From Ranitomeya imitator (Eukaryota), in contig NC_091286.1 of assembly GCF_032444005.1 (NCBI RefSeq), positions 624,092,001 to 624,156,000 of the forward strand: a DNA stretch of 64,000 bases, written 5' to 3'. The position numbers were made by a program, and so were the translations under genes. Position 1 is the first letter of the stretch. Each line of letters begins with the position of its first letter. Below are positions 9,427 to 45,894 of the stretch, one piece after another. The notes under the pieces are model-generated. The model was not told the DNA's origin. It was given only the letters and a program-made list of their open reading frames with translations, and searched no databases.

Positions 9427-10867
9427 TTAGTAAAGCAAAGTGAGGTATCCCGGGCCACGCAGTCCACGCAGTTTGCCAGGCCGTCTATACAGCGGTTCAG
9501 CTGTGCTGCCTCAGCGTAGGCTGCACAGCATGTCTTGCTCAGGTTAGCCCCCCTCTTTGCTTCTGCTCACCGGGCCCCATATACCAGTAATGGCAGTAAT
9601 GCCCTTATGGCGGGCCTGCCACACAGATACACACTCTCTAACCTCCTATTTTAGAGCTGTCACACTGGACAGATCACAGCTTCCTGTCTCATCCCGTTGA
9701 GCTCTGCTCTCCTGTGACTTCCGCCCCTCCCACTCCTGTGCCAAAACTCAAAACTATTGGCCGCTCTGCTCACTGACAAAGGAGGATGTCATGTATGCAA
9801 CACATCCTGGATCCTCCTATCTGCAGGACAGACAGGTGCCTCTCCTCCACAGCGATGGAAAATAGAAATCCCAGGATAGAGAGGCAGGGATCAGGGCAGA
9901 ATGGGCGGCATCGATTAGTGCTCAGAATAGCTTTCACCTGATTTGCTGTTGCTTCCATTGCATTTTGGCGGCCGACGCCTTGGTTGTGTTAGGCCATCGC
10001 GACACGATCGTAGATTCTCTCATTCAAGAGAATCAGATCATTTATGTGAGTTTGCAGAAATCGAACCGCACTCAGATGTCATCCGAGTGCAGTCCAATAT
10101 ATTCCACCTACCCATAAACTTGAATGGGTGTGCCATACAATTTTGAGAACCACTCACAGCATGTGGCAATTTTTTTCTCATCCCAAATTGATATGAGAAG
10201 ATAAAATGCTTATCAGCACTGCCCTATACAACAGCATTGGTCCAAGTGCTATTAGATAACACATCGGACAGCACTAATCTGATGTATACACTCGTGTGAG
10301 CGAGACCTTACGCATATAAAGTCCGATTAATCATTTCCAGGGTTATTTTTGTACCAATTTCTTCAATTTTATTTCCTTATATGACCTTTGCATAAAATAA
10401 ACAATGCTTTCTATTTTTGTCTTTAACCAATTTTGTTCTGCTGAAACATCACAAATTTTTTTTTAAAAATTTCATGCGTACATGGAACCACTCAGGGAAG
10501 GACTGGAGTACATTTTTGAAAAAAATCCTTTTCTTTTGCTTTTGTTTTGGTGGAGTGATGGTGGGAGGTTTGGATCTTGGTATCATTCGGCTAAAAGCTA
10601 GTTGCACACAATGGGGGCTATTCATTCGAGGCTTTTTGCCAGATTTCTGACAAAAAAAAGCTATAAAAACTCTTACTTTTTGTGCAAATGCTAGATTAGG
10701 CAAACAATGAAATGTCTGGCATGTTTGCGCCATTTGCGCCCCAGCTCTGACAAATTGGGGGGCAGGAGTTGGTGGCTCATCAAATGGCTGGAGTAAGATT
10801 CATGGCGAGGCGCACATAGCGACGCATGCCACTACGAACCTAGTCTGATTCATTAAGAGGATAGGAG

Positions 10868-12102
10868 TGGAGCGCCCCCAGACACAGGGCCACGAGTTCT
10901 CAGTATCGGGCCTCTCTGGTTCGGTTCTGAGGCTGTCACGGTGGCTAGATCCGGTCCGCGACCCTGCTAAGGGGCGTCCAATAAAGGTGGTGCAGTCTGT
11001 CAGGGGTTCGTGACGCCACCTGTGGTATTCGGTCAGGGTGACCGACGCTGCTGTGGGGTCCGCTGGGGTGATGGAATGGCAGCTGGATGGTATACCTTCC
11101 CACAGGTGAAGTATGTCCCCAGGGCTTCCCAGTAAGGTAGATGGTAATGGTGTAGGGTGCAGTCAATAACGAGGACACAAGGTTGCAGTCTCTTTACCTC
11201 TTTACTGTAGACTTCAGGATCCTCAATCCAGAGCACGCTTAACAGGGCTATCTGAGACCGGCCGGTCCGATGGGCACATCCAGAGTTTCCTTCGCAGATG
11301 GAAATCGTTGCCCACCACTAGCGCCTGTGTGTTGTAGTCCTACCCTGCTGAGCATTCGGAATAGTCCTCACAACTGCTGTTCTCGTTCGTTTGTTCTCTA
11401 CAGCTCTCTCTCTCTTTGGCTCTTATGGCTAGGACGCACCCGTATGACAGGAAGGCCTGGAGGTCTTTCGGGACCCTACAGACGCCCCTCTCCCACTGTT
11501 GCCCCCTATGTCTTCGTAGGTGTAGTAAGGTAGACAGCCAACCTATAATTAACTGTCCTGCGGAGTTCGAAGTAAGGCCTAGAGTCAGTTACTCCCGCGG
11601 TGTTCCGGCCACCGGCTACGCGCCTCAGTAAGATGTTGCCTCTCTCTCTCGGCACGACTCCTACTGGCTCTCCTTTGTGCTTGATCTCGTTTACACTGTT
11701 CCACAATATCCTTCCCTTTGTGTCTCTCTCTTGGATACCGCCGCGGGGTGTGCAGGCGCGGTTCCATTACGTTCTGCTCTGTTCGCTAGGCACCTGCCAG
11801 GTTCCCACGCCTGACAGGGACCCCCCTGTGCCTTCTCCCTGCAACACCCCCTGCCATGGGATGTTGCCTGAATCCAACCCAATCAGCTTCTGATTAACTT
11901 CCTCCCCAACCCCTAGTTTTACCAGTGTGAGGAGTGGCCCAATAAATAAAGCCTTTTTCTCCCCCTAGTGGCCGGAGTGTGAAGTGTAATGTGTTCTGGT
12001 GATACCTGGTCAGGAGAACTCCTTTAGTGCCATCAGACGTACCATCACTCCCCTTAGTGGCAGAGCGTCATACTGCAACGACCAGGTCTCTGGGGCGCTG
12101 CT
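10868..12102 (-). mobile_element. Solo LTR, Gypsy family A (copy A1, 1235 bp)
   Basis: Inverted termini TGGAGCGCCCC...GGGGCGCTGCT; 4-bp TSD GGAG (10864-10867, 12103-12106); homologous along its length to 36347-36881 + 45082-45802. Orientation inferred from similarity to the family-B LTR layout. Confidence 0.85.
10935..11018 (+). other. tRNA-Ser-like segment inside LTR A1 (antisense to the LTR); not a canonical tRNA gene
   Basis: Begins GTCACGGTGGC and ends GTTCGTGACGCCA, which is the reverse complement of the first 13 nt of the PBS at 37773. The ends pair as an acceptor-like stem. No canonical T-arm. Confidence 0.55.
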
Positions 12103-12256
12103 GGAGCATCTGCTCCAAAACCGAGAGAATCGCCAATCTTGATGAATCCCCTCAGTATCTTCTCCATGTGGGGAACTCATGATGACATTTGATGAGGAAC
12201 GTTTAAGTGCAGGGGTGTTGCACCTTGGCATTCCAGTGGGTGCGACAAGGACATAC

Positions 12257-12422
12257 CAGTCTTGAGAGGCATCTGCTTACAGTAGTTGGGTTCCAACTGG
12301 GACTCAGCAAAGAGAGACAAGCTGCAGGGATAGAATATGCTAAAAAGGAGCATGACAAACACTGTGAGCAACAACAGACAGCCAAGGAATAGTAAGTGCC
12401 CCCTGTGTCGAGCCACTGGGCC
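12257..12422 (-). CDS. Candidate isolated host exon encoding a hydrophobic (TM-like) peptide; unidentified
   Basis: Pyrimidine-rich acceptor TCTCTCTACATTTCTCCTAG| and donor G|GTATGT bound a 166-nt open segment: GPVARHRGHLLFLGCLLLLTVFVMLLFSIFYPCSLSLFAESQLEPNYCKQMPLKT. No homology recognised. Confidence 0.28.
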
Positions 12423-12858
12423 CTAGGAGAAATGTAGAGAGACTGTCTGTAGTGCAGCAGCTGAGCCCTACAGCTAAAATGCCCATAGACCAAAGGTCTG
12501 CTCAGACTCAGATTGATATATGGTTGTCTATTTATCTGCTTCCAGCTTGATTGAGGAACTAGACCACTAGAGTACCCTGAAAAAAGTATAATGTTCTCAG
12601 GTTTCCCTATGTAAATCAGCACCCTCACATTTTTTTTCCTAAAATCCCTCTTACAGCCCACCTACTGACAGAAGCCTACATAGAATTCCTGAGGTCCTAT
12701 AGCAAAGGTCCCAATCGGGCCGCACATTGGCCTTTGGCTAACATGACAACAGTTGAGTTCCCACAATACCGTCATAGTGAGTCCAATGGGGATGACAGAG
12801 AGCCCCACTTCTGTCTAACCATTTAACTGTCATGGTTGTGGATCGCCACCGCATCTAA

Positions 12859-13354
12859 GGCTACTTTCACACATCAGGTTTTTTGCATCAGACACAATCC
12901 GGTGAATGTTGGAAAAAGCGGATCCGGCACTGATTGTGAAAAACTGATGCGGCAGATTCGTTTTTTTCGGTCAGATCCGACTAGCATATCCAGATAATTG
13001 GATAAAAAAAATTTTTCAGTACGCTCAGTTTAAAAAAACGGAATCCGGTGCCGGAATCCGTCATTTTCCGGATCCATCACCTTCCGGCTCCCATACGTTT
13101 CCATTCTAGCAAACAGCTGGCGCTTCCGGCTTTTTCACCAGAGACAAAAAACGTTGCTATGGACGTTTTTTCCAGAAACCGGAAACAGCAGATTTGCCAG
13201 ATCCAGTGAAAACCGGACAAAACTCAATGTCATCCGGCACTAATACAAGTCTATGGGAAAAAAACGGATCCGGCGGCAACATTCGCCGGATCCGTTTTTT
13301 TTAAATTTAGCCGGATTGAGCCTGACAGCGAAAACCTGATGTGTGAAAGTAGCC
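12859..13354. mobile_element. PIF/Harbinger-type MITE (family H2)
   Basis: TIR GGCTACTTTCACACATCAGG...CCTGATGTGTGAAAGTAGCC, TAA TSD on both sides, internal CCGGATCCG repeats. Confidence 0.88.
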
Positions 13355-22330: not shown

Positions 22331-23635
22331 TAAAACAAATTGGAGCTGAAGTAAATTTTTTGTGAAAAAAAGTTAAATGTTAATTTTTATTTAAACATTC
22401 CAAAAATTCCTGTGAAGCACCTGAAGGGTTAATAAACTTCTTGAATGTGGTTTTGAGAACCTTGAGGGGTGCAGTTTTTAGAATGGTGTCACACTTGGGT
22501 ATTTTCTATCATATAGACCCCTCAAAATGACTTCAAATGAGATGTGGTCCCTAAAATAAAATGGTGTTGTAAAAATGAGAAATTGCTGGTCAACTTTTAA
22601 CCCTTATAACTCCCTAACGAAAAAAAATTTTTGGTTCCAAAATTGTGCTGATGTAAAGTAGACATGTGGGAAATGTTACTTATTAAGTATTTTGTGTGAC
22701 ATATCTCTGTGATTTAATTGCATAAAAATTCAAAGTTGGAAAATTGCGAAATTTTCAAAATTTTCGCCAAATTTCCATTTTTTTCACAAATAAACGCAGG
22801 TAATATCAAAGAAATTTTACCACTATCATGAAGTACAATATGTCACGAGAAAACAATGTCAGAATCACCGGGATCCGTTGAAGCGTTCCAGAGTTATAAC
22901 CTCATAAAGGGACAGTGGTCAGAATTGTAAAAATTGACCCGGTCCATAACGTGCAAACCACCCTTGGGGGTAAAGGGGTTAAAGTCCAAACGACAGCCAC
23001 CCCCTGCGATCGTTCGAAAATAAATGAATGAAAAACCCGACATTGGTTTCCCCTATTTTATTGAACCAACCAGACAAAACACACAGCTGGATGGTTAACA
23101 AGAATAGAGGGGTCCCCATGCTGTTTTTTAAATTATTTAAATAAACAATTTTAAAAAATGGCATGGGGTCCTCCCCCATTTTTGACAACCAGCCTTGCTA
23201 AAGCTCACAGCTGGGGGCTGATATTCTCAGGCTGGTAAGGGGCCATTGATATAGATCCCCCAGCCTAAAAACAGCAGCCTGCAGCTGCCCAGAAAAGGCG
23301 CATCTATTTGATGTGCCTTTTCTGGTGCTTTGCCCGGCTTTTCCTACTTGCCCTGTAGCGATGGCAAGTGGGGTAATTTTTGTGGGGTTGATGTCACCTT
23401 TCAGGTGGCATCAAGCCCACAGCTTAGTAATGGAGAGGAGTCTATAAGACACCTATCCATTACTAATCCTATAGTTATAATGTTAAATAAAGACATGGCT
23501 AGAATAAAGTCTTTTATTTCAAAAAATTACACAGACACCCTAAACTAAACCATACTTACTGCAACACCTAATTCCCCAACGCCCTCGATCTCCTGTAATA
23601 AATGTAAAATAATAAACCAAAAATATACCATACCT

Positions 23636-24422
23636 AATATCAACCAAGATGCTAAGTACATATTAACAAGAATCTGGAAAAAAAGAAACACGTATATATG
23701 ATGATCCCCCAGACTCTATATAATCGCTCCAAATATCAGATATGAAAAAAGGAGAAATGGCAGCATATAGTCAAATTGTAAAACAAACAATCATTATTTA
23801 TACAAAACACTTTAAAAAAGGGGTATAGGACATAAATATGCATAGTAATGTAGCCATAACATGACATGAATAGGGGAAGGAAACATCCCACATCCCACCC
23901 CCCCAAACGTAGAGTAATCAGATAGTCGCAGTCTAACACCAGGAGGGCACCTATGCGGGTGACCACATAAAGACACCAGATAGGTGAAAGCCAACAACAC
24001 ACTGGCAAAAAGCAGAGATCTCTACACAGTAATAATACCTAACAAGTAGGTACCTACCTCTGTACAGGACTAGACAAAATGTCTATGCTACCACTCATGG
24101 TCCCTGCCACACCAAACCGTATCATGTATAAAGAGTAATGAGGTAATACGGTGTGACGGGGAACCACCGCTACATATAGCACCAAATGGAGAATACACAG
24201 CCAGTGTGTGAAGACGGCCGAGAAAAGGCCCAGTGCAAACACTAATTAGAAAACACGCCAAGTGCTCACCTAATGTCTGTGGGGGGAGAGAGATGGGGGG
24301 GTCCCGCCGGTGTAGACGCCCCGACGCGCGTTTTGCGGCGTGAACACGCCGCTTCCTCAAGGGGAGTATATCATAAGGCAGAGCAGGACCTGCCTATAAC
24401 CTCCCCGACCCTAGTCACCTGT
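23636..24422 (-). repeat. PLE2 3' pseudo-LTR (~790 bp)
   Basis: Near-identical direct repeat of 28952-29741. Confidence 0.92.
24319..24364 (-). ncRNA. Hammerhead-like motif in PLE2 3' pLTR (non-canonical core)
   Basis: Minus strand CCCC-TTGAGGA-A-GCGGCG-TGTTCA-CGCCGC-AAAA-CGCGCG-TC-GGGG; the canonical GAAA reads AAAA. Confidence 0.6.
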
Positions 24423-25093
24423 TAAAATTTAGCCAATCCGGGCGGCGCTAGCGGCGCATGCGCGCTGCGGCGGGTAAGCCCGGCAGGAGGACCTGGCGCC
24501 CAGCCCAGCATAGAGATCAGGTGAAAAACACCAGAAACTGCACGCTGGACAGAGAGGACGCCGGCCCACATACCAAAGCCGCCCACCTGCAGGGCCGCAA
24601 GGGAGGCGTGTCCACCAAAAGTGAACAAAGGAAAATACGGGGACACAAGGAATAAGGTGACCTGAGCAAAGACACCCCACCACATTATATGCACACATCC
24701 CAACGCGATATGTACACAGTTGTAATAAAATACATCACACAATGAATACAAGATATACAATAGTAATAGTAATCCGATCCGCCCTGAGGCCAGGGCAATA
24801 TCACTTGTGATGCACATACTCCGTGGTCTCCGTGGACAATATATATGGTGATCGGAGGTCTTGTAATCCATGTAGATGGCAAAACTGGATGTCAATTAAC
24901 AATATCTGTGGAGGAGTGAGCATAGCTCAGAGCCGGGGAAGCCACAGACAGGGCTCACATAACATAGGACACTAAATAAGAAAGAAAAAATAAAAATGAA
25001 TTAAAAACAAGTTAAAACAAAAAGGAAAAACACCGGTGGAACTCGGAACCTATATGATGGAAAACATCACACCAGGAGAGAATCTCATGGAGG

Positions 25094-36260: not shown

Positions 36261-36300
36261 TTGCCTGAAGAAGGAGCCACGGTGCTCTGAAAGCTTCCAA
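36261..36300 (+). ncRNA. Minimal hammerhead-like motif (mirror copy on - strand at ~36201-36240)
   Basis: TTGC-CTGAAGA-AG-GAGC-CACGGT-GCTC-T-GAAA-GC-TT-(C/G)CAA: canonical CUGANGA core and palindromic AGCT stem III. Each arm has one substitution in stem I or stem III. Confidence 0.65.
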
Positions 36301-36412
36301 ACATATTATTTTCTGGTTAGCCAATAAAGGTATCACTCCTAGAATATGTAGCGCTCCCACGTAAGGGCAATGAGGTACTCAGTACCGGGTCCTTCAGTCC
36401 TTCAGCGGGGAT

Positions 36413-36501
36413 ATCACGGTGGCCCGACCCGGCCAGTGGCCCTATGAGGGGCGCCCAATAAAAGGCAGAGTTCGTATAGAATGGTAGTGTTTGTGACGCC
36501 A
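36413..36501 (+). other. Second copy of the tRNA-Ser-like segment, in LTR A2
   Basis: ATCACGGTGGCCCGA...GTTTGTGACGCCA; the same helices as in A1, with a different internal sequence. Confidence 0.5.
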
Positions 36502-36881
36502 CCTGTGGTATTCAGTCAGTGTGACCGACGCTGCTTAGAGGTCTGCTGGGGTGATGTGATGGCAGCTAGATGGTATACCTTCCCACAGGTGAAGTGTTTC
36601 CCCAGGGCTTCCCAGAGGTGTAGATGGTGATGGTGGGTGTTGTAAGGTGCGGTAAATAATGAGGACACAAGGGTGCAGTCTCTTTACCTTTACTGAAGGC
36701 TTCAGCATCCACAGTCCAGAGTACCGGATGACAGGGTAGGCAGAGTCCAGCCGGTCTGATAACAATTCCAGTGTCCCCTTATCCAGGTTGAAATCAGTAG
36801 CCTTCCTTCTAGCATCTGTGTGTTGTAGTACCTCCCTGCTGAGCAAATCGGTGAGGTCCTCACAACTTTTGTAGATGTTAT

Positions 36882-37770
36882 TGTGGCACCCCTAGGGGTA
36901 TTTGCCACAAAAATAGTTACTGACAGTAAATGCAAATACTAAAATAGCAAGACTGCACTACCACCTCCAGCCAGAAGGGGGAGCTCCAGAGACTCCCCTT
37001 GATCCATTCTGGTCTGAGAGAAGAACTGGCAGTTGGGCTAAGGAGCTGATAGTGAGAGGTCATACAGTTGAATCTCTAACAGCCCTGTGACTGTTACCAG
37101 GCCTAAATCACCGGCCTGAGGAGAAGAGGGATAGAGAAAAAGGACATTGTGAGAACCGGGTAGCATTAATCACTACCCAGAACAGGCGCAAAGACGGATA
37201 CCGGATCCGTGGCTGTATTCATTACATATAATACAGCAACCGGAAAAACGTGAGGTGATATCAGCTTCACTAGGGTCGGACGCAGCAACAGACACAGAGT
37301 TCAGCGGTACTCCTGGAGGGGGTAAGCCGATAAAAGGACTCGGGTTGCCCGTCGAACCAGGACCCGGAGGGGACAGATTGGGCCGGCAGCCAGTTCACAT
37401 ACAGCAGCAGGGCCACACAGATATTGCGTACAATAAGAGGCGAAGACCCCGGCAGGGTCAAAGTAACTCAGAGTTCCCATACAGACTCCGGTGACAGGAC
37501 TGGTTGTAAATCCTTTTTTGTTAAAGTAAACTGGTTAAACGTTTCAGTGCCTCAGTCTTTCATTTGGACAATAGCCATCTATCCAGGATTGGGATCATCA
37601 CCGCTGGGAGAACCTGCTGCTGATCAAGTAAGTGCCTGTTCCCTCACGATACCCTTTACACTGTGCATTGCCTGAGGCCACAGCACCGGGTCAAGCCACC
37701 CGTGACACCCCCCTCAAGAGACAGACCCCATTGGTCCGGTGCTGGGTACCCCGGTCTCTTGGGCGTCACA
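36882..37770 (+). repeat. 5' LTR of Gypsy B
   Basis: TGTGGCACCCC...GGGCGTCACA; only three substitutions versus the 3' LTR seen by eye. Confidence 0.97.
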
Positions 37771-37772
37771 AT

Positions 37773-37790
37773 TGGCGTCACGAACAGGAT
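37773..37790 (+). promoter_or_regulatory. Primer-binding site, complementary to the 3' end of a tRNA-Ser(CGA)
   Basis: TGGCGTCACGAACAGGAT, 2 nt after the LTR. Its complement ATCCTGTTCGTGACGCCA matches the 3' end of a vertebrate tRNA-Ser(CGA) isodecoder as I recall it; verify in GtRNAdb. Confidence 0.85.
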
Positions 37791-38240
37791 CTAGCCAGCC
37801 CGTATACCGGGTATTGTGTGCCGTGATTGGAGCCCAAAACTGTGAAAACTGGGATGAAAAATCTTGAAAATTGACTTTATTAAAGAAAAATCCATTCTCC
37901 ATTGAAAACTATTGAAAGTGACTTTTCCCCATTGGTTATAATGGAGTAAAGATGGCCGCCATCCCCTGAGGTAATCACTTCATAACCGTTAGGCACGAGA
38001 CTGTTAATTGAGCTACGCCATCACCTGAGCCCCAGTCTAACTGAAAAACTTCAGAATCCGCCATTACAGAGCGCGGTGGGTGGGAGCAGCAGGGGGCGTG
38101 TCATTGTGGGCGGCACCAAGCTGAGCGCTCTGACATCAGAGCAAGGGGAAAATCGATCCTGCTGCACAGCGGAACGAATCTACACTATCCCGACGGAAGC
38201 GGAGGACCGGAAGGGTCCGGATTAACTAAGGGGGCACAGT

Positions 38241-39281
38241 ATGTCGCAGCACGGAGACGCCGCAGCACCCGGCGACGCTAATGCAGCTGAAAGACAGAGT
38301 GTCGATAGAGAGTTCGGCAGTGCAGCGGTGCAAGGATTGGCGCCCATCATGCCGGTGCTGATGCCATATACCCCGGGTGGCCCGTGGCTTCCAATGTATG
38401 AAGGTGAGCCTAATACCCTTGACGATTTCAGAGAAAAGATGCTGGCCCATTTTAACATGTTCCCCGTGGGTGAAGTTCAGCGTGTTAGTCTCCTGATGAT
38501 GCAGTTAAGTGGCCATGCTAAGCGAGAAGTCACAGCATGGGCAGCTGATCTAAAAGGCACTGTTGAACGCATATTTGCTGGATTAAAAGCTACATTTGAA
38601 ACCACTGCCAGCAGCAAAGCTAAAGTACGATTCTTTAATTGCAAACAAAAAGTTAATGAGGGCGTGAGAGACTTTGCCTTAAACCTGCAGGAAGCCCTTA
38701 AATCACTTACACTGGCTGAACCCATTTTTAACACCGGAGCGGATAAACTGCTAAGAGATCAATTTATTGAGGGACTCTACACCCCTTCTCACCGGGGGCA
38801 TGTGAGCATGCTTGTTTTTAAGAACCCTGAATTGACATTTGCCCAATTAAAGGAGAGCGTTATACGTCTCCAGCTGGCAGAGGCACCTCGGGATCAGGAT
38901 CCTGCGCAACTCATGGCAGAGGCTCCTCAACAACATGGAGTACCAGTGACATCAGCTATGTCCGGGGCCATTGCTAAGCCCCTGGGGCCCAGTACTAATG
39001 AGGCTCTTCAACAAAAGCTTGACTCTTTAGCTGATGTTGTTGCTTCAATGGCTAAAACCATGCAGGAGATGAGAGGACCCAAGATGGAGTTGTCAAACCG
39101 TAGAGAAGGTGTTCCATGGATGAGACCCCGGAGATACCCGACATGGAGAGGACGACCCCGCGACCGCTACCAACCGGATGGACAGCCCATTTGCCGCCGT
39201 TGCCAGCAGCCAGGCCACTTTGCACGAGATTGTGATTTAAACGGGAATCCCCTGGGAATGCGGGCCGCTTCGCAGGAATGA
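38241..39281 (+). CDS. gag: Gag (346 aa) with C-terminal CCHC zinc knuckle
   Basis: Uninterrupted ORF after the PBS; knuckle CRRCQQPGHFARDC. Confidence 0.92.
   Translation: MSQHGDAAAPGDANAAERQSVDREFGSAAVQGLAPIMPVLMPYTPGGPWLPMYEGEPNTLDDFREKMLAHFNMFPVGEVQRVSLLMMQLSGHAKREVTAWAADLKGTVERIFAGLKATFETTASSKAKVRFFNCKQKVNEGVRDFALNLQEALKSLTLAEPIFNTGADKLLRDQFIEGLYTPSHRGHVSMLVFKNPELTFAQLKESVIRLQLAEAPRDQDPAQLMAEAPQQHGVPVTSAMSGAIAKPLGPSTNEALQQKLDSLADVVASMAKTMQEMRGPKMELSNRREGVPWMRPRRYPTWRGRPRDRYQPDGQPICRRCQQPGHFARDCDLNGNPLGMRAASQE
39236..39276 (+). promoter_or_regulatory. -1 programmed ribosomal frameshift signal (T TTA AAC + downstream hairpin)
   Basis: The slippery heptamer at 39236-39242 is in the gag codon phase. 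The -1 frame opens exactly there (TGA|TTT AAA CGG) and runs into pol. A hairpin CCTG-G-GAA-T-GCG-GGC-CGC-TTC-G-CAGG starts 8 nt downstream. Confidence 0.8.
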
Positions 39282-42200
39282 ACTTTCAAGGCCCAACACC
39301 CTGGCACGACAGGTACATCGGAGGACGACCCATTATCCCTATCGTGCTGGACGGAATTCCCCTCAACGCTTTGCTGGACACAGGTTCCCAGATTTCATCT
39401 ATACCGTATATCCTTTATAAGAGGTACTGGGCTAATGCAGATATTGATAAAGGGCCCTCTGATGTTGAACTAGATATATGGGCCAGTAATGGTAAGTTGG
39501 TACCGAAACTAGGATTCAGGGAGATGACCATAAAGATTGGTAAAGTAGAATTGAAGAAACAGGGTATAATTGTTGTTGATGTTGACCGGCGGAACTGTGA
39601 ACCAACTGTATTGATAGGAATGAATGTGTTAGAGAACTGCTTTTCCGAAGTCATTTCTGTCTTACAGCAAATTGCTGAAACTGCCCAATCCTGCCAGCAG
39701 AGAGTTCTCCGGAGGGAAATAAAAGTATTGATGTTAAGGCAACAGGTAGAAGTTGCAGGTGGAGAAATCGGCAGTGTGAGGGTAAGTGATTCAACATCTA
39801 TTGTAATCCCACCAAAAACAGAAATGCTGGTATGGTGTAGAGCAGCCATTGGTACTAAGGGACGAGATTATCAAGCCTTAATAGAACCAGTGTACACCGA
39901 CAGCAGGCCCACTATACTCACAGCACGAGGGATAGTCGAGGTACACCGAGGACGAGTGCCGGTACGACTTTTGAACTGTGGAGAGGAAGAGGTCACTTTG
40001 CCAAGGTATGCTACAATGGCAAAGCTATATACTGTTGACAACAATGCCATCACAACCAGTGAGCCCTTAGAACCAACCTGTCAGGTGGAAGGCAATGGCT
40101 CAGATGGAGAAATGGAGGATTGGTGCCAACAGCTACACGTGGGCATAAATTCAACACCTACCCATCAAAAACAAGGGGTGTATAGGCTAGTGACGGAATA
40201 TGAACAAGTCTTCAGTAAACACCCATTGGACTTCGGACGGATAGAAGGGGTAGAACACACAATCCCCACCAGTGACCATCCCCCAATAAAAGAAAGATAT
40301 AGACCCATACCGCCCGCTCACTATCAATGTGCAAAAGATATGCTGAGGGAGATGAAACAGGCCGGGGTAATAAGAGACAGCTGTAGCCCCTGGGCGGCCC
40401 CTCTAGTGATTGTCAAAAAAAAGGACGGAACCATGAGAATGTGCGTAGACTACCGGAAGATTAATAACATCACCCATAAAGACGCCTACCCCTTGCCTAG
40501 GATAGAAGAGTCCTTAACTGCTTTGAAATCTGCTAATTATTTTTCCACCTTAGACTTAACAAGCGGGTATTGGCAAGTCCCTGTGGCTGAGCGAGATAAG
40601 GAAAAGACGGCATTCACCACACCAATGGGTCTATGTGAATTTAATCGCATGCCATTCGGACTCTGCAACGCATCCGGTACCTTCCAGCGGCTGATGGAAT
40701 GCTGCCTCGGACACAAGAACTTCGAGACCGTCCTCCTGTACCTAGATGATGTGATCGTCTACTCAAAGACTTACGAACAACACTTAATAGACCTGGCAGA
40801 AGTGTTCGAAGCCTTATCCAGGTATGGCATGAAAGTCAAGCCATCCAAATGTCACCTTCTCAAGCCAAAGGTACAGTACCTGGGACACATCGTGAGTTCG
40901 GAGGGAGTAGCACCAGATCCCGAGAAAATAAGCGCCATAAGGGATTGGCCAAGACCTACCAGCGCAAAAGAAGTGAGACAATTCCTGGGATTGGTGGGTT
41001 ACTATCGCAGATTTATAAAAGGATTTACCAAGTTGGCAGCACCCTTGCAAGACACCTTGGTAGGGCAGACGAAGAAACCTTCAAACCGAAACCCTCCTTT
41101 TCAGTGGAACGACGAAAGGGAAGACTCCTTTGAACAACTAAAGAAGGCACTAACCGGAGAAGAGGTTCTGGCATACCCAGATTACCATCAACCTTTCATC
41201 CTCTACACCGATGCCAGTAATGTGGGACTAGGAGCGGTGCTGTCACAAAAGCAAGAAGGTCGGGAGAAAGTCATCGCCTTTGCAAGTAGAAAGCTCCGGC
41301 CTACTGAAAGAAATTCAGAAAATTACAGCTCCTTCAAATTGGAACTACTGGCAGTAGTTTGGGCTGTGACTGAACGTTTCAAACACTATCTGGCCGCTGC
41401 AGAATTTATTGTCTATACTGACAACAATCCGTTGACCCACCTGGACACAGCCAAATTAGGTGCGTTAGAACAGCGATGGATAGCCCGGTTATCTAATTAC
41501 AACTTCAAGATCAAGTATCGAGCAGGTCGCAAGAATGGAAATGCCGATGCCCTATCCCGGATGCCACACTTGAGAGATGTAGAAGAAGAAATGGGGGAGC
41601 TTGAAGAAATTGAACTACCAGCCTTCCATCATCCCAAGGCAAAACATCATCAGTCAAGTACCTATCAGAAACAACAAGAGGCGAATTTAAATCCGTTAGC
41701 ACACCATAGATGGGCTGACACCCAAGACAGCAATCCGGCTGTGAAGTTGGTGAAGGAACTGTTAACTGAGCAAAGTGCATATCCCGATGAGGATGCCCCA
41801 GAAGAGACGCATCAACTCTGGAAAGAGAGAGGCAAAATGTTCCTGTATCAAGGGAAGCTCTGTAGAAGGTACACCAATCCGAAAACACATGAATTGGTTT
41901 GGCAGATTATCGTGCCTAAACAAGATGTCAAGATGGTCCTCGAAGCTTACCATAATGGTGCTGGTCACTTCGGTTGGAAAAAGTTAGAAGTACTTCTAAG
42001 AGAAAGATTTTATTGGGTCGGGATGAGAAAATCAATCGAACAGTGGTGCAGAAATTGTGGCCCGTGCAACCTCAGAAGAAACGATCAAAAGAACCAAAGA
42101 GCACCACTGCAGCCCATAATCACCAAACAACCACTTGAACTTGTAGCCATGGACCACGTGAAGTTGACACCAAGCCGGTCTGGCTATGTCTATGCCTTGA

Positions 42201-43414
42201 CCATCGTGGACCATTATTCACGCTTCTTGGTAGTAGTACCCGTAAAAGATCTGACAGCAAAAACAGCAGCCAAAGCGTTCCAAACGTACTTTTGTAGACC
42301 CCATGGATATCCGGAACAGGTTCTCACCGACCAAGGTACAGCCTTTGAATCAGAGATCTTCAGAGAATTCTGTAATATGTATGGTTGCAAAAAGATCCGG
42401 ACGACGGCCTATCATCCACAAACAAACGGCTTATGCGAGAAGATGAACCATATTGTAATAGAACTACTAAAGACTTTACCTGAGGCAGAAAGGAATCAAT
42501 GGCCAGAGAAATTGCCTGACTTGGTGGATCTGTATAATCATGTCCCGGTGAGTTCCACCAATTGCACCCCAGCTTACCTTATGCGTGCAAGACCCGGCCA
42601 ATTACCAATCGATCTAGAAATGGGAATTCTGAAACCAGACGCAGAAGTCCAAGACTCCAATTGGGATATCATACGGCAAAAGCAGTATCGCCAAGTGCAA
42701 GAGAGTGTGGAAAGAAGCCTTCAGCAAACTAGAGAAAGACAAGAGCGAACTTTCAACCAGAATGCTCTAGCGACCCCATTAAGACCAGGTGACCAAGTGC
42801 TCAAGAGAAATCGTCGAACCAATAAACTGGACAATCAGTGGGAAGCCGTACCCTACACAGTTTTACCAACAAGAGTGGATAATCCTAAAATGTGTCTCAT
42901 TAGCAAAAACGGAGGCTTAACATCTGTACTAGTGTCAAGAGACAATCTTAAATTATGTCCGGAAGCATTGAAAGAGCCAGACGTTGTCCAGCCAGAACCA
43001 GAAGTTATTCAACCCATACAGGTTCAACCAGTAAAGGAAAAAGAAGAGGAAGTGTATCACACCTGTATAGGAGACTTTCCCAAAACCCTACTAACATACC
43101 ATGGTGCAGTAGTGGTTCCCATGGTGGCCTTTTACCCAACACCAAACCCAATACCAGAAGTCCCAAGACAGGAAGAGGCTGACCCCGTACTACAGGAGGT
43201 TCCAGGCCAGGAAGAACAGATTCCTGGTCAGAGTAATCCCATTCACGGTGGACTTGCCAACTCCATAGTCGTGGAATTATCTTTAGCAGAGCGGGCAGAT
43301 ACTACATCCGCAGTAGACAGTAGTACACCACATGAAGAGACACCGCTATTACGTAGATCACAGCGTAGTACCCAGGGTCAATTACCGGCCAGGTATGCAG
43401 ATTACCAACTATAA
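39278..43414 (+). CDS. pol: Pol polyprotein: protease, RT, RNase H, integrase (frame open from ~39236 via frameshift)
   Basis: LLDTGS protease motif; RT DAYPLP, LDLTSGYWQ, MPFGL, YLDD; RNase H YTDAS, ELLAVVWA, TDNNPL; integrase HHCC (GHFG...CRNC) and DDE core (MDHV, LTDQG, GLCEKMN); no stops. Confidence 0.97.
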   Translation: MNFQGPTPWHDRYIGGRPIIPIVLDGIPLNALLDTGSQISSIPYILYKRYWANADIDKGPSDVELDIWASNGKLVPKLGFREMTIKIGKVELKKQGIIVVDVDRRNCEPTVLIGMNVLENCFSEVISVLQQIAETAQSCQQRVLRREIKVLMLRQQVEVAGGEIGSVRVSDSTSIVIPPKTEMLVWCRAAIGTKGRDYQALIEPVYTDSRPTILTARGIVEVHRGRVPVRLLNCGEEEVTLPRYATMAKLYTVDNNAITTSEPLEPTCQVEGNGSDGEMEDWCQQLHVGINSTPTHQKQGVYRLVTEYEQVFSKHPLDFGRIEGVEHTIPTSDHPPIKERYRPIPPAHYQCAKDMLREMKQAGVIRDSCSPWAAPLVIVKKKDGTMRMCVDYRKINNITHKDAYPLPRIEESLTALKSANYFSTLDLTSGYWQVPVAERDKEKTAFTTPMGLCEFNRMPFGLCNASGTFQRLMECCLGHKNFETVLLYLDDVIVYSKTYEQHLIDLAEVFEALSRYGMKVKPSKCHLLKPKVQYLGHIVSSEGVAPDPEKISAIRDWPRPTSAKEVRQFLGLVGYYRRFIKGFTKLAAPLQDTLVGQTKKPSNRNPPFQWNDEREDSFEQLKKALTGEEVLAYPDYHQPFILYTDASNVGLGAVLSQKQEGREKVIAFASRKLRPTERNSENYSSFKLELLAVVWAVTERFKHYLAAAEFIVYTDNNPLTHLDTAKLGALEQRWIARLSNYNFKIKYRAGRKNGNADALSRMPHLRDVEEEMGELEEIELPAFHHPKAKHHQSSTYQKQQEANLNPLAHHRWADTQDSNPAVKLVKELLTEQSAYPDEDAPEETHQLWKERGKMFLYQGKLCRRYTNPKTHELVWQIIVPKQDVKMVLEAYHNGAGHFGWKKLEVLLRERFYWVGMRKSIEQWCRNCGPCNLRRNDQKNQRAPLQPIITKQPLELVAMDHVKLTPSRSGYVYALTIVDHYSRFLVVVPVKDLTAKTAAKAFQTYFCRPHGYPEQVLTDQGTAFESEIFREFCNMYGCKKIRTTAYHPQTNGLCEKMNHIVIELLKTLPEAERNQWPEKLPDLVDLYNHVPVSSTNCTPAYLMRARPGQLPIDLEMGILKPDAEVQDSNWDIIRQKQYRQVQESVERSLQQTRERQERTFNQNALATPLRPGDQVLKRNRRTNKLDNQWEAVPYTVLPTRVDNPKMCLISKNGGLTSVLVSRDNLKLCPEALKEPDVVQPEPEVIQPIQVQPVKEKEEEVYHTCIGDFPKTLLTYHGAVVVPMVAFYPTPNPIPEVPRQEEADPVLQEVPGQEEQIPGQSNPIHGGLANSIVVELSLAERADTTSAVDSSTPHEETPLLRRSQRSTQGQLPARYADYQL

Positions 43415-43577
43415 AGCTCATAATGTGAATTGTATATATGTTATGCCGTATATAGTTAAACAGAAAATGTAGTATAGTCATTGTTATCAGTCTGCAACGT
43501 TTAAGCCCAGTGCCTACAGAGACTTGTCTGTATGAACTTCTTGCATATTCTTGAACTTTTCATCAGCCCGGAGGCAC

Positions 43578-43867
43578 TAACATAGTAACATAGTAACATA
43601 GTAACATAGTTAGTAAGGCCGAAAAAAGACATTTGTCCATCCAGTTCAGCCTATATTCCATCATAATAAATTCCCAGATCTACGTCCTTCTACAGAACCT
43701 AATTGTATGATACAATATTGTTCTGCTCCAGGAAGACATCCAGGCCTCTCTTGAACCCCTCGACTGAGTTCGCCATCACCACCTCCTCAGGCAAGCAATT
43801 CCAGATTCTCACTGCCCTAACAGTAAAGAATCCTCTTCTATGTTGGTGGAAAAACCTTCTCTCCTCC
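43578..43867 (-). mobile_element. 5'-truncated CR1 LINE 3' end inside the Gypsy 3' UTR
   Basis: Minus strand encodes the CR1 ORF2 C-terminus (RRGFFTVRAVRIWNCLPEEVVMANSVEGFKRGLDVFL, stop 43699-43701), followed by an 8-bp (CTATGTTA)n tail. Confidence 0.88.
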
Positions 43868-44179
43868 TCTAAATCAAAGCTCCGGAAAGACTGCTTTTTG
43901 AACTTTGCTCCTCGCTCTTTTTGAACTTTCTTTAGACTTTATATTGATAACTCCGTTGGAAAAATGGAACTAAATTGCTGGACACAAAGTGCAGTGCCTT
44001 TCCTAGTACCTTCAAGGATAGAACTGTATTAATGGACGCTATTTGAAGTGACTTTGTACAGAACTATATTTTTGTTTCCTCGAGTGGTTTTTGTAACTTT
44101 TCATTTTTAAGACTCTGTACATATTAATTGTTATTTCAAAATGTTATTGTCCCACAGTCCCGGAGTACTGTTCTTAACT

Positions 44180-44188
44180 AAGGGGGAA
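44180..44188 (+). promoter_or_regulatory. Polypurine tract
   Basis: AAGGGGGAA directly abutting the 3' LTR. Confidence 0.85.
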
Positions 44189-45077
44189 TGTGGCACCCCT
44201 AGGGGTATTTGCCACAAAAATAGTTACTGACAGTAAATGCAAATACTAAAATAGCAAGACTGCACTACCACCTCCGGCCAGAAGGGGGAGCTCCAGAGAC
44301 TCCCCTTGATCCATTCTGGTCTGAGAGAAGAACTGGCAGTTGGGCTAAGGAGCTGATAGTGAGAGGTCATACAGTTGAATATCTAACAGCCCTGTGACTG
44401 TTTCCAGGCCTAAATCACCGGCCTGAGGAGAAGAGGGATAGAGAAAAAGGACATTGTGAGAACCGGGTAGCATTAATCACTACCCAGAACAGGCGCAAAG
44501 ACGGATACCGGATCCGTGGCTGTATTCATTACATATAATACAGCAACCGGAAAAACGTGAGGTGATATCAGCTTCACTAGGGTCGGACGCAGCAACAGAC
44601 ACAGAGTTCAGCGGTACTCCTGGAGGGGGTAAGCCGATAAAAGGACTCGGGTTGCCCGTCGAACCAGGACCCGGAGGGGACAGATTGGGCCGGCAGCCAG
44701 TTCACATACAGCAGCAGGGCCACACAGATATTGCGTACAATAAGAGGCGAAGACCCCGGCAGGGTCAAAGTAACTCAGAGTTCCCATACAGACTCCGGTG
44801 ACAGGACTGGTTGTAAATCCTTTTTTGTTAAAGTAAACTGGTTAAACGTTTCAGTGCCTCAGTCTTTCATTTGGACAATAGCCATCTATCCAGGATTGGG
44901 ATCATCACCGCTGGGAGAACCTGCTGCTGATCAAGTAAGTGCCTGTTCCCTCACGATACCCTTTACACTGTGCATTGCCTGAGGCCACAGCACCGGGTCA
45001 AGCCACCCGTGACACCCCCCTCAAGAGACAGACCCCATTGGTCCGGTGCTGGGTACCCCGGTCTCTTGGGCGTCACA
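44189..45077 (+). repeat. 3' LTR of Gypsy B
   Basis: 889-bp direct repeat of 36882-37770. Confidence 0.97.
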
Positions 45078-45894
45078 TTATGTTTTCCTCTCTGTCCCCC
45101 AGTTGGTATGGATAGGACAAACCCGTATGACTTATGGACTGAGGCTTGTTTATAAGGACCCTAGAGACGCCCCGACCCCCATAATTTGCCACCGTGTCTT
45201 CTTAGGTATTAAGGTCGGGCAGCCAACTTGGAATAGACTGTCCTGCCGGTCTCTGAAGTAAAGTGTAGAGTCTATTACTCCCTCGGTGTTCCAGCCACCG
45301 GTCCGCGCCCCAGAAGGAGGCAGACTCTCCCAGGACAGGACTCCTACTGGTTTTGTTCTCCTTGTGCTATGACTTCGTTTCTCACTCCCTACAATGCAAT
45401 TCCTTTCTTGTCCTTTCTTAGGATGCTGCCAAATGTGGGGCAGGTGCAGCTCCATGTCTTTCTCTCTCGCTAGACGTCTATCAGGATCCCACCCCTGACA
45501 GGGACCTCTGTCTGCAGCTCCGATGTTCCTCCTTTTCCCTTTGTCTGCCTGACAGGTGTTGCCTGGGCAAAGCCCAGTCAGCTTCTGACTAACTTCCTAT
45601 CGAACCCACCAGTTTTACCCGAATGTGAGGAGTGCCCTAGTAGATAGGAGCAAGGCTCCCCCTGGTGGACTGGAGTGTGAAGTGTGTTGTGTGTTTTGTG
45701 ATACCTGAAACGGTGAACTCCTTTAGTGCCATCAGACGTAACATCACTCCCCCTGGTGGAAGAATAACATTACTGCAACAACCAGGACTCTGGGGTGCTG
45801 CAAATACTTCTGTCATCATTGGGCAGAAAAATATTCACATCGATTTTTCTGGCTAACACGGTACCACAATACAATTTATTATTGTACATCATGA

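What the first reader, a model, noticed from the sequence alone, without database searches (positions are those of the whole stretch)
10935..11018. A Gypsy LTR appears to encode a mimic of its own primer tRNA (tRNA-Ser-like, CCA-ended) on the antisense strand
Seen: an 84-nt segment begins GTCACGGTGGC and ends GTTCGTGACGCCA. The last 13 nt are the exact reverse complement of the start of the PBS used by the related Gypsy B (TGGCGTCACGAAC, 37773). The ends pair as a 7-bp acceptor-like stem (GTCACGG/TCGTGAC) followed by G-CCA. Inside are a D-arm-like hairpin (GGCT-AGATCC-GGTC) and a second hairpin (CCCT-GCTA-AGGG). Recalled knowledge: a vertebrate tRNA-Ser(CGA) starts GTCACGGTGGCCGAG, ends CCTGTTCGTGACG+CCA and is about 85 nt long. 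Inference: either (a) an antisense LTR transcript is processed into a tRNA-like, self-supplied primer or a PBS-blocking regulator, or (b) U5 carries a second PBS plus a site for the tRNA 5' strand (bipartite primer binding). I do not know of this arrangement being described, but I cannot search the literature here.
Basis: partly seen in the sequence, partly recalled or inferred. Interest (0 to 1): 0.8.

Follow-up and report, generated by a model that had tools for sequence, protein, structure and literature searches.

The report
Primer site buried in frog LTR
The supposed tRNA mimic is the back-side view of two ordinary control sequences of a frog Gypsy-type retrotransposon LTR: a primer-binding site for tRNA-Ser that has ended up inside the LTR, and a conserved nearby motif that matches the other end of the same tRNA.

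Summary
The letters are as described. Window 10935-11018 (+) starts with tRNA-Ser(CGA) nt 1-11 and ends with its last 10 nt plus CCA, checked against a real tRNA-Ser gene (L042).

It is not a tRNA mimic:
- ARAGORN and Rfam find nothing.
- The fold is no better than shuffles (z about 0).
- The 60-nt middle is unrelated to the tRNA (p 0.95 and 0.78).
- The second copy has a degraded stem.

The segment lies in U5 of a 1.24-kb solo LTR (10868-12102, sense on the minus strand, 4-bp TSD). Two sense-strand elements explain it.

1. ACCACA-GG-TGGCGTCACGAAC is an LTR-end, spacer and PBS junction. In many other genomic copies it is the working PBS, because contigs leave the window exactly at 11006 and run into internal sequence. 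Here it is internalised in a composite U5.
2. GCCACCGTGAC is a U5 motif also found in the second copy, in the intact Gypsy B (64 nt before its LTR end) and in relative L079.

The motif could pair with the PBS junction or with the tRNA 5' strand. This is unproven: relatives that use another tRNA-Ser show no matching change.

Interest is modest.

The parts
10868..12102 (-). Family-A solo LTR, copy A1 (1235 bp). Its sense strand is the window's minus strand.
   Evidence: Its ends are TG...C(T), against TG...CA in copy A2. About 15 of 17 terminal nt form an inverted repeat, and it is flanked by a 4-bp duplication GGAG. The U5 tail aligns with the Gypsy B U5 only in this orientation: z 6.7 and 8.6 against 0.2 and 2.0 for the opposite strand. 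Contigs read LTR, then PBS, then internal sequence on the minus strand.
10864..10867 (.). Target-site duplication GGAG, left copy
12103..12106 (.). Target-site duplication GGAG, right copy
10935..11018 (.). The reported 84-nt segment: the antisense view of the internal PBS, a 60-nt spacer and the U5 motif
11006..11018 (-). Internalised primer-binding site (PBS1), TGGCGTCACGAAC. It is complementary to the last 10 nt plus CCA of tRNA-Ser(CGA).
   Evidence: It matches the tRNA of L042. The duplex with the tRNA 3' end is -24.4 kcal/mol. 121 DNA contigs and 13 contigs of a run guessed to be RNA match rightwards from 11006 and carry unrelated AT-rich sequence to the left. One 2159-nt contig continues 1.9 kb beyond it.
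11019..11026 (-). Inner LTR-type end ACCACA plus 2-nt spacer GG, directly upstream of PBS1
   Evidence: Read directly from the sequence. The layout is the same as in Gypsy B...CACA, AT, PBS.
11006..11132 (-). Module C: a U5 block plus spacer plus PBS. It is the best conserved and most abundant part of the LTR and also occurs in other contexts.
   Evidence: A1 and A2 are 85-93% identical here against 57-82% elsewhere. Summed contig depth is about 2.2-2.4 million here against 0.2-1.4 million elsewhere (depth also tracks conservation). Contigs break off at 11006 and 11132, and rare variants skip about 10983-11164.
11100..11108 (-). Upstream arm (sense CACCTGTGG) of a predicted 9-10 bp U5 stem. 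It pairs with the junction of LTR end, spacer and PBS1 start at 11017-11025.
   Evidence: MFE folds of A1 and A2 sense RNA. The arms are identical in both copies, so there is no covariation.
10935..10945 (-). U5 motif GCCACCGTGAC, complementary to tRNA-Ser(CGA) nt 1-11. It lies 67 nt before the LTR's 3' end.
   Evidence: It holds 10 consecutive invariant columns in the A1/A2/B alignment. Local homology with B is centred on it. Duplex with tRNA nt 1-16 is -25.6 kcal/mol against -15.2 with PBS1.
10868..10934 (-). Terminal 67 nt of U5, ending in the inverted repeat that matches the LTR start
36347..36881 (-). Family-A copy A2, part holding the equivalent segment (36413-36501, 89 nt: ATCACGGTGGC ... 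GTTTGTGACGCCA)
   Evidence: About 73% identical to A1, aligned, TSD AATA. It is split by the Gypsy B insertion.
45078..45802 (-). Family-A copy A2, remainder
36882..45077 (+). Gypsy B: an intact Ty3/Gypsy element with 889-bp LTRs identical at 886 of 889 positions and TSD TTAT
   Evidence: Gag has PNMA and zinc-knuckle domains, and Pol has PR, RT, RNase H and IN.
37695..37706 (+). U5 motif of Gypsy B, GCCACCCGTGAC, 64 nt before the LTR end and 66 nt before the PBS
   Evidence: In the MFE fold its GCCA pairs with the PBS start TGGC and its GTGAC pairs with the LTR end GTCAC.
37773..37790 (+). PBS of Gypsy B, an 18-nt perfect complement of the tRNA-Ser(CGA) 3' end
   Evidence: -33.9 kcal/mol

Best explanation
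The 84-nt segment is not a gene for a tRNA-like RNA. It is the reverse-strand image of two sense-strand cis elements in the U5 region of a Ty3/Gypsy solo LTR, whose sense strand is the window's minus strand.

Element 1 is a genuine tRNA-Ser(CGA) primer-binding site with its own upstream '...ACA + GG' LTR-end junction. In many sister copies this is the real 5'-LTR/PBS boundary. In this LTR type it is internal, 137 nt before the LTR end, so the LTR is a composite. A U5+PBS block (module C, 11006-11132) sits inside a U5 whose last roughly 135 nt, including the integrase-type terminal repeat, belong to a different U5 type related to that of Gypsy B.

The most likely origin (inferred) is template switching between co-packaged RNAs of two tRNA-Ser-primed families, or priming from a downstream PBS, which moves the LTR boundary outward.

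Element 2 is an 11-nt U5 motif, GCCACC(C)GTGAC, kept at about 60-67 nt upstream of the LTR end or PBS in A1, A2, Gypsy B and relative L079.

A PBS is the complement of the tRNA's 3' acceptor strand. Any cis sequence that pairs with the PBS region therefore looks, on the other strand, like the tRNA's 5' acceptor strand. Together the two imitate an acceptor stem with a CCA tail.

Most likely function (inferred, not shown): the motif is the U5 arm of a stem that masks the LTR-end/PBS junction in genomic RNA. It may then take over the tRNA's freed 5' strand once the 3' strand has annealed to the PBS.
For: **Not a tRNA**
- ARAGORN finds 0 genes and Rfam gives no tRNA hit at E up to 10.
- Fold z is -0.03 on the plus strand and 0.05 on the minus strand, and the structure is not a cloverleaf.
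- The middle 60-65 nt against the real tRNA-Ser give p = 0.95 for A1 and 0.78 for A2.
- In A2 the stem has an A-C mismatch and two G-U pairs, and the segment is 89 nt long.

**Orientation and solo-LTR status**
- TSDs and termini.
- Strand-specific homology to the U5 of B: z 6.7 and 8.6.

**A real PBS elsewhere in the genome**
- Loose ends fall exactly at 11006 in 121 contigs of run X1 and 13 of run X14, with an AT-rich continuation.
- A 2159-nt contig runs from the LTR through the PBS into 1.9 kb of other sequence.

**Composite U5**
- Depth and identity peak over 11006-11148.
- Contigs end at 11132, and rare variants lack about 10983-11164.
- The LTR start and the outer end form a terminal inverted repeat of about 15 of 17 nt, while the inner end ACCACA does not.

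**Motif conservation**
- 10 invariant columns in the A1/A2/B alignment.
- B has the motif 64 nt before its LTR end.
- L079 has CACCGTGAC 59 nt before its tRNA-Ser(CGA) PBS.

**Pairing potential**
- Motif with tRNA nt 1-16: -25.6, -25.8 and -20.4 kcal/mol. Motif with PBS or junction: -13.6 to -21.6 kcal/mol.
- B's MFE fold pairs the motif with the LTR end and the PBS start.
Against: - No full-length family-A element is in the window, so the PBS that should follow the outer LTR end is predicted, not seen.
- All read evidence is from assembled contigs, without strand or end information, and the RNA status of three runs is a guess.
- The direction of the composite event is open. It could be an insertion of module C, or the short variants could be a deletion between GACTGCACC-like repeats.
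- The spacing of the two motifs (84 nt in A1, 89 in A2) is close to the tRNA length (85). I treat that as coincidence.
- In A1 and A2 the MFE folds do not pair the motif with PBS1, so the masking stem is predicted only for B.
- A1, A2, B and L079 may share the motif by descent alone.
Confidence: 0.65

Rival explanations
1. Bipartite primer binding. The U5 motif base-pairs in trans with nt 1-11 of the annealed tRNA-Ser, capturing the acceptor 5' strand released when the 3' strand binds the PBS. This would stabilise or activate the initiation complex, as the Ty1 boxes, the Ty3 and Drosophila gypsy second PBS, or the HIV-1 primer activation signal do with other tRNA parts.
For: - Complementarity is contiguous: 11 of 11 in A1, 12 of 12 with one G-U in A2, 11 plus a 1-nt bulge in B, and 9 of 9 in L079.
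- The duplexes are stronger than any cis alternative: -20 to -26 kcal/mol against -14 to -22.
- The order of the half-sites (GCCA..GTGAC) fits the tRNA 5' end, not a continuous helix with the PBS.
- There is precedent for multipartite tRNA contacts (PMC1635307, PMC1865047).
Against: - Relatives that use another tRNA-Ser (PBS TGGCGTAGTCGG) carry a similar block, GGCCACC..GTGACA, at their LTR end. They have no complement of their own tRNA 5' strand in U5, so there is no covariation.
- tRNA nt 8-11 (UGGC) equal PBS nt 1-4, and nt 1-7 nearly equal PBS nt 5-11. Complementarity to the tRNA 5' end is therefore confounded with complementarity to the PBS region.
- Base modifications near nt 9-10 may hinder pairing (general knowledge, not tested).
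Confidence: 0.25
2. Fossil of a complete primer tRNA. Plus-strand strong-stop synthesis once read through the whole tRNA-Ser, so its full complement (85 nt) was fixed next to the LTR end. Only the two ends stayed recognisable.
For: - The segment starts exactly where a primer tRNA would be attached (CA + GG + TGG...), and it is 84 nt long against 85.
- Read-through past the usual stop is documented when m1A58 is missing (PMC8599865).
- Relative L078 carries a 24-nt tRNA complement followed by an 11-nt duplication.
Against: - The middle 60 nt show no residual similarity (p 0.95 and 0.78).
- The 5' part, 10935 to about 10982, belongs to a module that also exists without PBS1 in rare variants and in Gypsy B.
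- A2 is 89 nt long.
Confidence: 0.07
3. Reader's option (a). An antisense LTR transcript is processed to a CCA-ended tRNA-like RNA that primes reverse transcription or blocks PBS sites, acting like a 3' tRNA fragment.
For: - A1 has a 7-bp terminal stem with a GCCA tail.
- A 127-nt contig from a run guessed to be RNA covers 10903-11026 with 2 differences.
- 3' tRNA fragments are known to target PBS sequences (PMC7472051).
Against: - No cloverleaf, no tRNA-model hit and no excess stability.
- The stem and length are not conserved in A2.
- The A and B box matches are partial in A1 and absent in A2, and no T-run terminator lies downstream (sequence).
- The contig has no strand information.
Confidence: 0.03

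Closest known systems
Canonical retroviral / LTR-retrotransposon PBS (tRNA 3' end complement placed 0-5 nt after the 5' LTR)
   Same: The sequence TGG..., its complementarity to the tRNA-Ser(CGA) 3' end, and the CA + 2-nt spacer upstream are all as in the canonical case. In sister copies it is followed by internal sequence.
   Different: In this LTR type the PBS lies inside the LTR, 137 nt before its end, so it is present in solo LTRs. Only 13 nt match, against 18 in Gypsy B and 24 in L078.
Multipartite primer contacts: Ty1 boxes 0/1/2.1, the Ty3 bipartite PBS, the Drosophila gypsy 5' + 3' PBS (PMC1635307), the HIV-1 primer activation signal (PMC1865047)
   Same: A second short site on the element RNA is complementary to a part of the primer tRNA outside its 3' 18 nt. 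It lies in U5 near the PBS and is conserved among relatives.
   Different: Here the complementary tRNA part would be the 5' acceptor strand plus nt 8-11, not the T, D or anticodon arms. No annealing data exist, and there is no covariation with primer identity.
U5-IR / U5-leader stems of retroviruses and the PBS hairpin of HTLV-1 (PMC13366004)
   Same: Predicted stems pair a U5 sequence with the LTR-end/PBS junction, in module C at 9-10 bp and in Gypsy B. The fish relatives have a 10-bp inverted repeat around the PBS.
   Different: These are thermodynamic predictions only. In A1 and A2 the motif itself is not paired with PBS1 in the MFE fold.
Cassandra TRIM elements (LTRs carrying a 5S rRNA-like Pol III unit; recalled from the literature, not retrieved here)
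   Same: The idea of a small-RNA gene copy inside an LTR.
   Different: Here there is no tRNA-like body, no conserved Pol III boxes and no fold.

Membership tests
tRNA or tRNA-like (mimic) gene | Cloverleaf recognised by tRNA detectors | tested here: not met
   ARAGORN finds 0 genes in the window. Rfam finds no tRNA-family hit at E up to 10 in 10000-13000.
tRNA or tRNA-like (mimic) gene | Body (D, anticodon, variable and T arms) similar to the mimicked tRNA | tested here: not met
   Global alignment of the middle 60-65 nt to the tRNA-Ser of L042 is no better than shuffles: p 0.95 for A1 and 0.78 for A2.
tRNA or tRNA-like (mimic) gene | Structure more stable than chance and conserved between copies | tested here: not met
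   z = -0.03. A2 has an A-C mismatch and two G-U pairs in the stem and is 89 nt long.
tRNA or tRNA-like (mimic) gene | Expressed as a discrete small RNA from the plus strand | not testable with these tools
   Only assembled contigs were available, with no strand or end information.
LTR-retrotransposon primer-binding site | At least 10-nt complement of a host tRNA 3' end including CCA | tested here: met
   13 of 13 against tRNA-Ser(CGA) of L042 plus CCA.
LTR-retrotransposon primer-binding site | Lies 0-5 nt downstream of an LTR end ...CA and is followed by internal sequence | tested here: inconclusive
   Met for sister copies (ACCACA-GG-PBS, then other sequence). In this copy it is followed by 137 more nt of LTR and then the TSD.
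Solo LTR of a Ty3/Gypsy element | TG..CA termini, terminal inverted repeat, 4-5 bp target-site duplication, no internal genes | tested here: met
   A2 has TG..CA and TSD AATA. A1 has TG..CT and TSD GGAG. The terminal inverted repeat is about 15 of 17 nt. Only short ORFs are present.
Solo LTR of a Ty3/Gypsy element | Homology to the LTR of an autonomous Gypsy element | tested here: inconclusive
   Only a block of about 26-50 nt in U5 aligns with Gypsy B (z 6.7 and 8.6). The rest is not alignable. No full-length family-A copy is in the window.
Multipartite PBS / primer-activation-type site | Complementary to a tRNA region outside the 3' 18 nt | tested here: met
   The motif is complementary to tRNA nt 1-11, with duplexes of -20.4 to -25.8 kcal/mol.
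Multipartite PBS / primer-activation-type site | Conserved in position and sequence among related elements | tested here: met
   A1, A2 and B and L079. It lies 59-69 nt upstream of the PBS or LTR end.
Multipartite PBS / primer-activation-type site | Covaries with the identity of the primer tRNA | tested here: not met
   L072-L075 use another tRNA-Ser (PBS TGGCGTAGTCGG). Their U5 has no CGACTAC-type complement, and they keep ..GTGACA.
Multipartite PBS / primer-activation-type site | Demonstrated annealing and an effect on initiation | not testable with these tools
   Needs in vitro annealing, structure probing and primer extension.

The most novel reading that the evidence does not exclude
A clade of frog Gypsy elements primed by tRNA-Ser(CGA) captures both strands of the primer's acceptor stem. 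The PBS takes the 3' strand, and a conserved U5 motif about 65 nt upstream takes the 5' strand plus nt 8-11. Before annealing, the motif masks the LTR-end/PBS junction, so this would be a strand-exchange switch.

In addition, elements carrying two PBS copies could toggle between a short and a long LTR depending on which PBS is used. That would explain why the short-LTR and long-LTR forms coexist in the genome.
Probability: 0.2. Interest if true: 0.6.

Novelty: new variant of a known kind. Interest (0 to 1): 0.3.

Why it matters
The headline idea, an LTR that encodes a mimic of its own primer tRNA, does not hold. That removes a false lead.

What remains is of specialist interest.
- A very abundant frog LTR family carries a working-type PBS inside the LTR. 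This shows that LTR boundaries in this clade have moved, by recombination at the PBS or by a shift in which PBS is used.
- Automated LTR annotation can be misled by such internal 'LTR-end + PBS' junctions.
- The conserved U5 motif, complementary to the primer's 5' end, is a concrete and cheap-to-test candidate for a new kind of auxiliary primer contact in vertebrate Ty3/Gypsy elements. Initiation of reverse transcription in these elements has hardly been studied.

Tried and rejected
- **ORF search for more LTR copies.** I searched the protein database with a spurious 77-aa ORF across the segment, hoping to fish out other LTR copies. Nothing was found.
- **Frog relatives' DNA.** The closest relatives of Gypsy B, in Anomaloglossus and Ranitomeya imitator, could not be fetched because the files are too large.
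- **Inverted U3 copy.** I tested whether the terminal 67 nt are an inverted copy of the LTR start, which a fold-back of strong-stop DNA would produce. Only about 15 nt match (z about 2.7 in A1, none in A2), so I rejected this.
- **Tandem duplication.** I tested whether module C and the tail are diverged tandem duplicates. There is no similarity, p 0.65 and 0.72.
- **Upstream LTR homology.** I tested whether the A and B LTRs are homologous upstream of the motif block. They are not significantly so.
- **Another LTR element as comparator.** The 23635/28952 repeat pair lacks TG..CA ends and a recognisable PBS.
- **L076.** This relative has tandem repeats in the leader and no PBS on the contig, so it is uninformative.
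- **Four-way alignment.** MAFFT placed L079 ambiguously because it has two block-like sequences. I count only its 9-mer, not the alignment.
- **Literature.** A search for 'second/duplicated PBS' returned only unrelated papers.
- **Earlier findings.** A search by sequence was blank.
Full report
**1. Observation**

Window 10935-11018 (+) reads GTCACGGTGGC ... GTTCGTGACGCCA and is 84 nt long.
- The last 13 nt are the reverse complement of TGGCGTCACGAAC. That sequence occurs at 37773 (+) as the start of the PBS of an intact Gypsy element, and once more with one mismatch at 36489 (-). This makes 3 sites where 0.04 are expected.
- To check the recalled tRNA with a tool-derived sequence, I scanned metagenome contigs for the two end motifs. 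Among 71 mostly chance hits there was one true eukaryotic tRNA-Ser(CGA) gene: L042:2222-2303 (-), 82 nt, followed by a T-run.
Gypsy B's PBS is its perfect 18-nt complement including CCA.

**2. It is not a tRNA-like molecule**

- ARAGORN finds no tRNA in the window. Rfam gives no tRNA-family hit in 10000-13000 even at E = 10.
- The plus-strand RNA folds at -28.8 kcal/mol against -28.7 +/- 3.2 for shuffles, z = -0.03. The minus strand gives z = 0.05. Neither fold is a cloverleaf.
- Without the 11 + 13 terminal nt, the middle aligns to the real tRNA no better than shuffled sequence: p = 0.95 for A1 and 0.78 for A2.
- In the second copy (36413-36501) the segment is 89 nt long and its 'acceptor stem' has an A-C mismatch and two G-U pairs.
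- The CCA tail is simply the complement of the TGG that starts a PBS.

**3. Context: a solo LTR whose sense strand is the minus strand**

- The segment lies in a 1235-bp unit, A1 at 10868-12102. A1 has a terminal inverted repeat of about 15 of 17 nt and a 4-bp duplication GGAG.
- A second copy, about 73% identical, is A2 at 36347-36881 plus 45078-45802. It has TG..CA ends and TSD AATA.
- A2 is split by Gypsy B (36882-45077). B has 889-bp LTRs identical at 886 of 889 positions, TSD TTAT, a Gag with PNMA and zinc-knuckle domains, and a Pol with PR, RT, RNase H and IN.
- B's Pol is 96% identical to a Ranitomeya imitator protein and 81-82% to Phyllobates proteins. The window is therefore probably from a dendrobatid frog.
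- Two lines of evidence fix the orientation of the family-A LTR.
  - The last roughly 135 nt read on the minus strand align with the U5 end of Gypsy B's LTR, z = 6.7 for A1 and 8.6 for A2. The opposite strand gives z = 0.2 and 2.0.
  - Public contigs read LTR, then PBS, then other sequence in that direction.

**4. The 3' motif is a real PBS that has become internal**

On the sense strand the sequence is ...GAATACCACA-GG-TGGCGTCACGAAC. That is an LTR-type CA end, a 2-nt spacer and a PBS, the same layout as in Gypsy B (...GTCACA-AT-PBS).

I laid contigs of one DNA run and three runs guessed to be RNA on 10600-12300. All were contigs only, so there is no strand or end information.
- The family is extremely abundant.
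- 121 contigs of the DNA run and 13 of one RNA-guess run match from 11006 rightwards. To the left of 11006 they carry an unrelated, AT-rich sequence.
- The base next to the break matches the tRNA, so in those copies the PBS is 14 nt long.
- One 2159-nt contig covers 11197 to 11007 and then runs on for 1.9 kb unlike the window.

In many elements, then, this is the working PBS at the 5'-LTR/internal boundary. In A1 and A2 it is instead followed by 137 more nt of LTR and then the target duplication.

**5. The LTR is a composite**

- The block 11006-11132 (module C) is the most conserved part between A1 and A2, at 85-93% against 57-82% elsewhere.
- Its summed contig depth is about 2.2-2.4 million, against 0.2-1.4 million for the rest of the LTR (depth also tracks conservation).
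- Contigs break off at both its edges, 11006 and 11132.
- Rare contigs join about 10980-10987 directly to about 11165, with 21-38 letters between the two sides that resemble 11133-11164. LTRs that have the tail but lack module C therefore exist.
- The outer LTR end forms the inverted repeat with the LTR start. The inner ACCACA end does not. The tail therefore belongs with the LTR body, and module C looks like the added piece.
- A deletion between GACTGCACC-like repeats that produced the short form cannot be excluded.
- I infer template switching between co-packaged RNAs of two tRNA-Ser-primed families, or priming from a downstream PBS. Neither is shown.
- Module C and the tail are not diverged duplicates of each other, p 0.65 and 0.72.
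- The 84-nt segment straddles the junction of the two modules. For that reason I regard its tRNA-like length as coincidence.

**6. The 5' motif is a conserved U5 element**

- On the sense strand it reads GCCACCGTGAC, 67 nt before the LTR end.
- A2 has GCCACCGTGAT. The change keeps a G-U pair with tRNA G1.
- Gypsy B has GCCACCCGTGAC 64 nt before its LTR end and 66 nt before its PBS.
- In the three-way alignment the motif is a run of 10 invariant columns in a region that is otherwise about 60% identical.
- I fetched relatives through B's proteins.
  - L079 (Pol 52% identical) has a tRNA-Ser(CGA) PBS, and CACCGTGAC lies 59 nt upstream of it.
  - L078 (Pol 49% identical) has a 24-nt tRNA complement, but too little U5 is on the contig to judge.
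- Duplex energies of the motif with tRNA nt 1-16 are -25.6 (A1), -25.8 (A2) and -20.4 (B) kcal/mol. With the PBS or the junction they are -13.6 to -21.6.
- In B's MFE fold the motif's GCCA pairs with the PBS start TGGC, and its GTGAC pairs with the LTR end GTCAC. This closes the last 64 nt of U5 into a stem-loop.
- In A1 and A2 the PBS1 junction pairs instead with an upstream CACCTGTGG over 9-10 bp.

**7. Limits on the functional reading**

- tRNA-Ser nt 8-11 (UGGC) equal PBS nt 1-4, and nt 1-7 nearly equal PBS nt 5-11. Complementarity to the tRNA 5' end and to the PBS region therefore cannot be separated by sequence alone.
- The one covariation test I could run was negative. It used four fish-type relatives, L072-L075, with Gag 29-30% identical (L072 is a loach record).
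  - They use another tRNA-Ser (PBS TGGCGTAGTCGGCAGG).
  - They carry a similar block, GGCCACCCC..GTGACA, at the very end of the LTR.
  - Their U5 holds no complement of their own tRNA's 5' strand.
  - They have a 10-bp inverted repeat, CTCGAGGTGG / CCACCTCGAG, around the PBS.
- The motif may therefore be an inherited U5 or att-proximal block whose fit to tRNA-Ser(CGA) is used in cis, in trans, or not at all.

**8. Comparison with what is known**

- Extra tRNA contacts beyond the PBS are established for Ty1, Ty3 and Drosophila gypsy (PMC1635307) and for HIV-1 (primer activation signal, PMC1865047).
- PBS-masking hairpins are described for HTLV-1 (PMC13366004).
- Read-through of the primer tRNA past position 58 occurs when m1A58 is absent (PMC8599865).
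- 3' tRNA fragments target PBS sequences (PMC7472051).
- I found no description of a PBS embedded in an LTR, or of a U5 site complementary to the primer's 5' acceptor strand. My literature access was limited.

**9. Verdict**

- The 'tRNA mimic' reading is rejected.
- The 'second PBS plus a 5'-strand site in U5' reading is anatomically right but functionally unproven.
- Novelty: a variant of known LTR and PBS architecture. Interest is modest.
- Other first-stage notes report further tRNA-Ser-primed LTR elements in this genome. I did not test them.

Noticed in passing
L078:40-72: This relative of Gypsy B has a PBS complementary to tRNA-Ser(CGA) over 24 nt, past the usual 18-nt stop at position 58. 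It is followed by a tandem repeat of the 11-nt AGGATTCGAAC. This looks like plus-strand read-through into the tRNA plus slippage.
   Followed up: partly
window 37759-37785: The last 11 nt of the Gypsy B LTR (TGGGCGTCACA) nearly duplicate the start of the PBS that follows 2 nt later (TGGCGTCACGA). The LTR-end/spacer/PBS-start junction GTCAC-AAT-TGGC resembles the tRNA 5' end GTCAC-GG-TGGC.
   Followed up: partly
window 37787-37808 vs 37688-37709 and 10942-10952: Gypsy B carries a second, degenerate copy of the U5 motif block directly after its PBS (GGATCTAGCCAGCCCGTATACC, 17 of 22 identical to the U5 block). Its first 11 nt are identical to the sequence just upstream of the motif in A1. A further CCGTGAT lies about 45 nt downstream of the PBS.
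   Followed up: no
window ~10983-11164 (contig joints): Rare genomic variants of the family-A LTR lack the internal PBS and the conserved block. They join the tail directly to the LTR body with 21-38 nt between the two sides. It is open whether this form is ancestral or a deletion.
   Followed up: partly
window 10982-10987 and 36457-36462 (+): An AATAAA (CCAATAAA) on the antisense strand of the LTR is conserved in both family-A copies, inside the 84-nt segment. No role is known.
   Followed up: no
window 36155-36346: A perfect-looking hairpin repeat (92-nt arms, 96% complementary, 8-nt loop) abuts the start of LTR copy A2. It is itself flanked by an inverted repeat of the surrounding sequence. 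It resembles a MITE or foldback.
   Followed up: no
window 23635-24430 and 28952-29749: A 797-bp direct repeat pair (97.9% identical) encloses minus-strand ORFs. It has no TG..CA ends and no recognisable PBS, so it is possibly a non-canonical retroelement (DIRS-like?).
   Followed up: partly
L072:3880-3990, L074:2880-2990, L075:2800-2910, L073:2950-3040: The fish-type relatives use a different tRNA-Ser isoacceptor (PBS TGGCGTAGTCGGCAGG). They flank the PBS with a 10-bp inverted repeat CTCGAGGTGG / CCACCTCGAG, a U5-leader stem as in retroviruses.
   Followed up: partly
L076:230-530: The leader of another relative holds an array of 15- and 27-nt tandem repeats (GACAGCGCACTCAAA...) between a motif-like block (GTCAAGCCCCGGCGGTGACGCC at about 108-130) and gag.
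   Followed up: no
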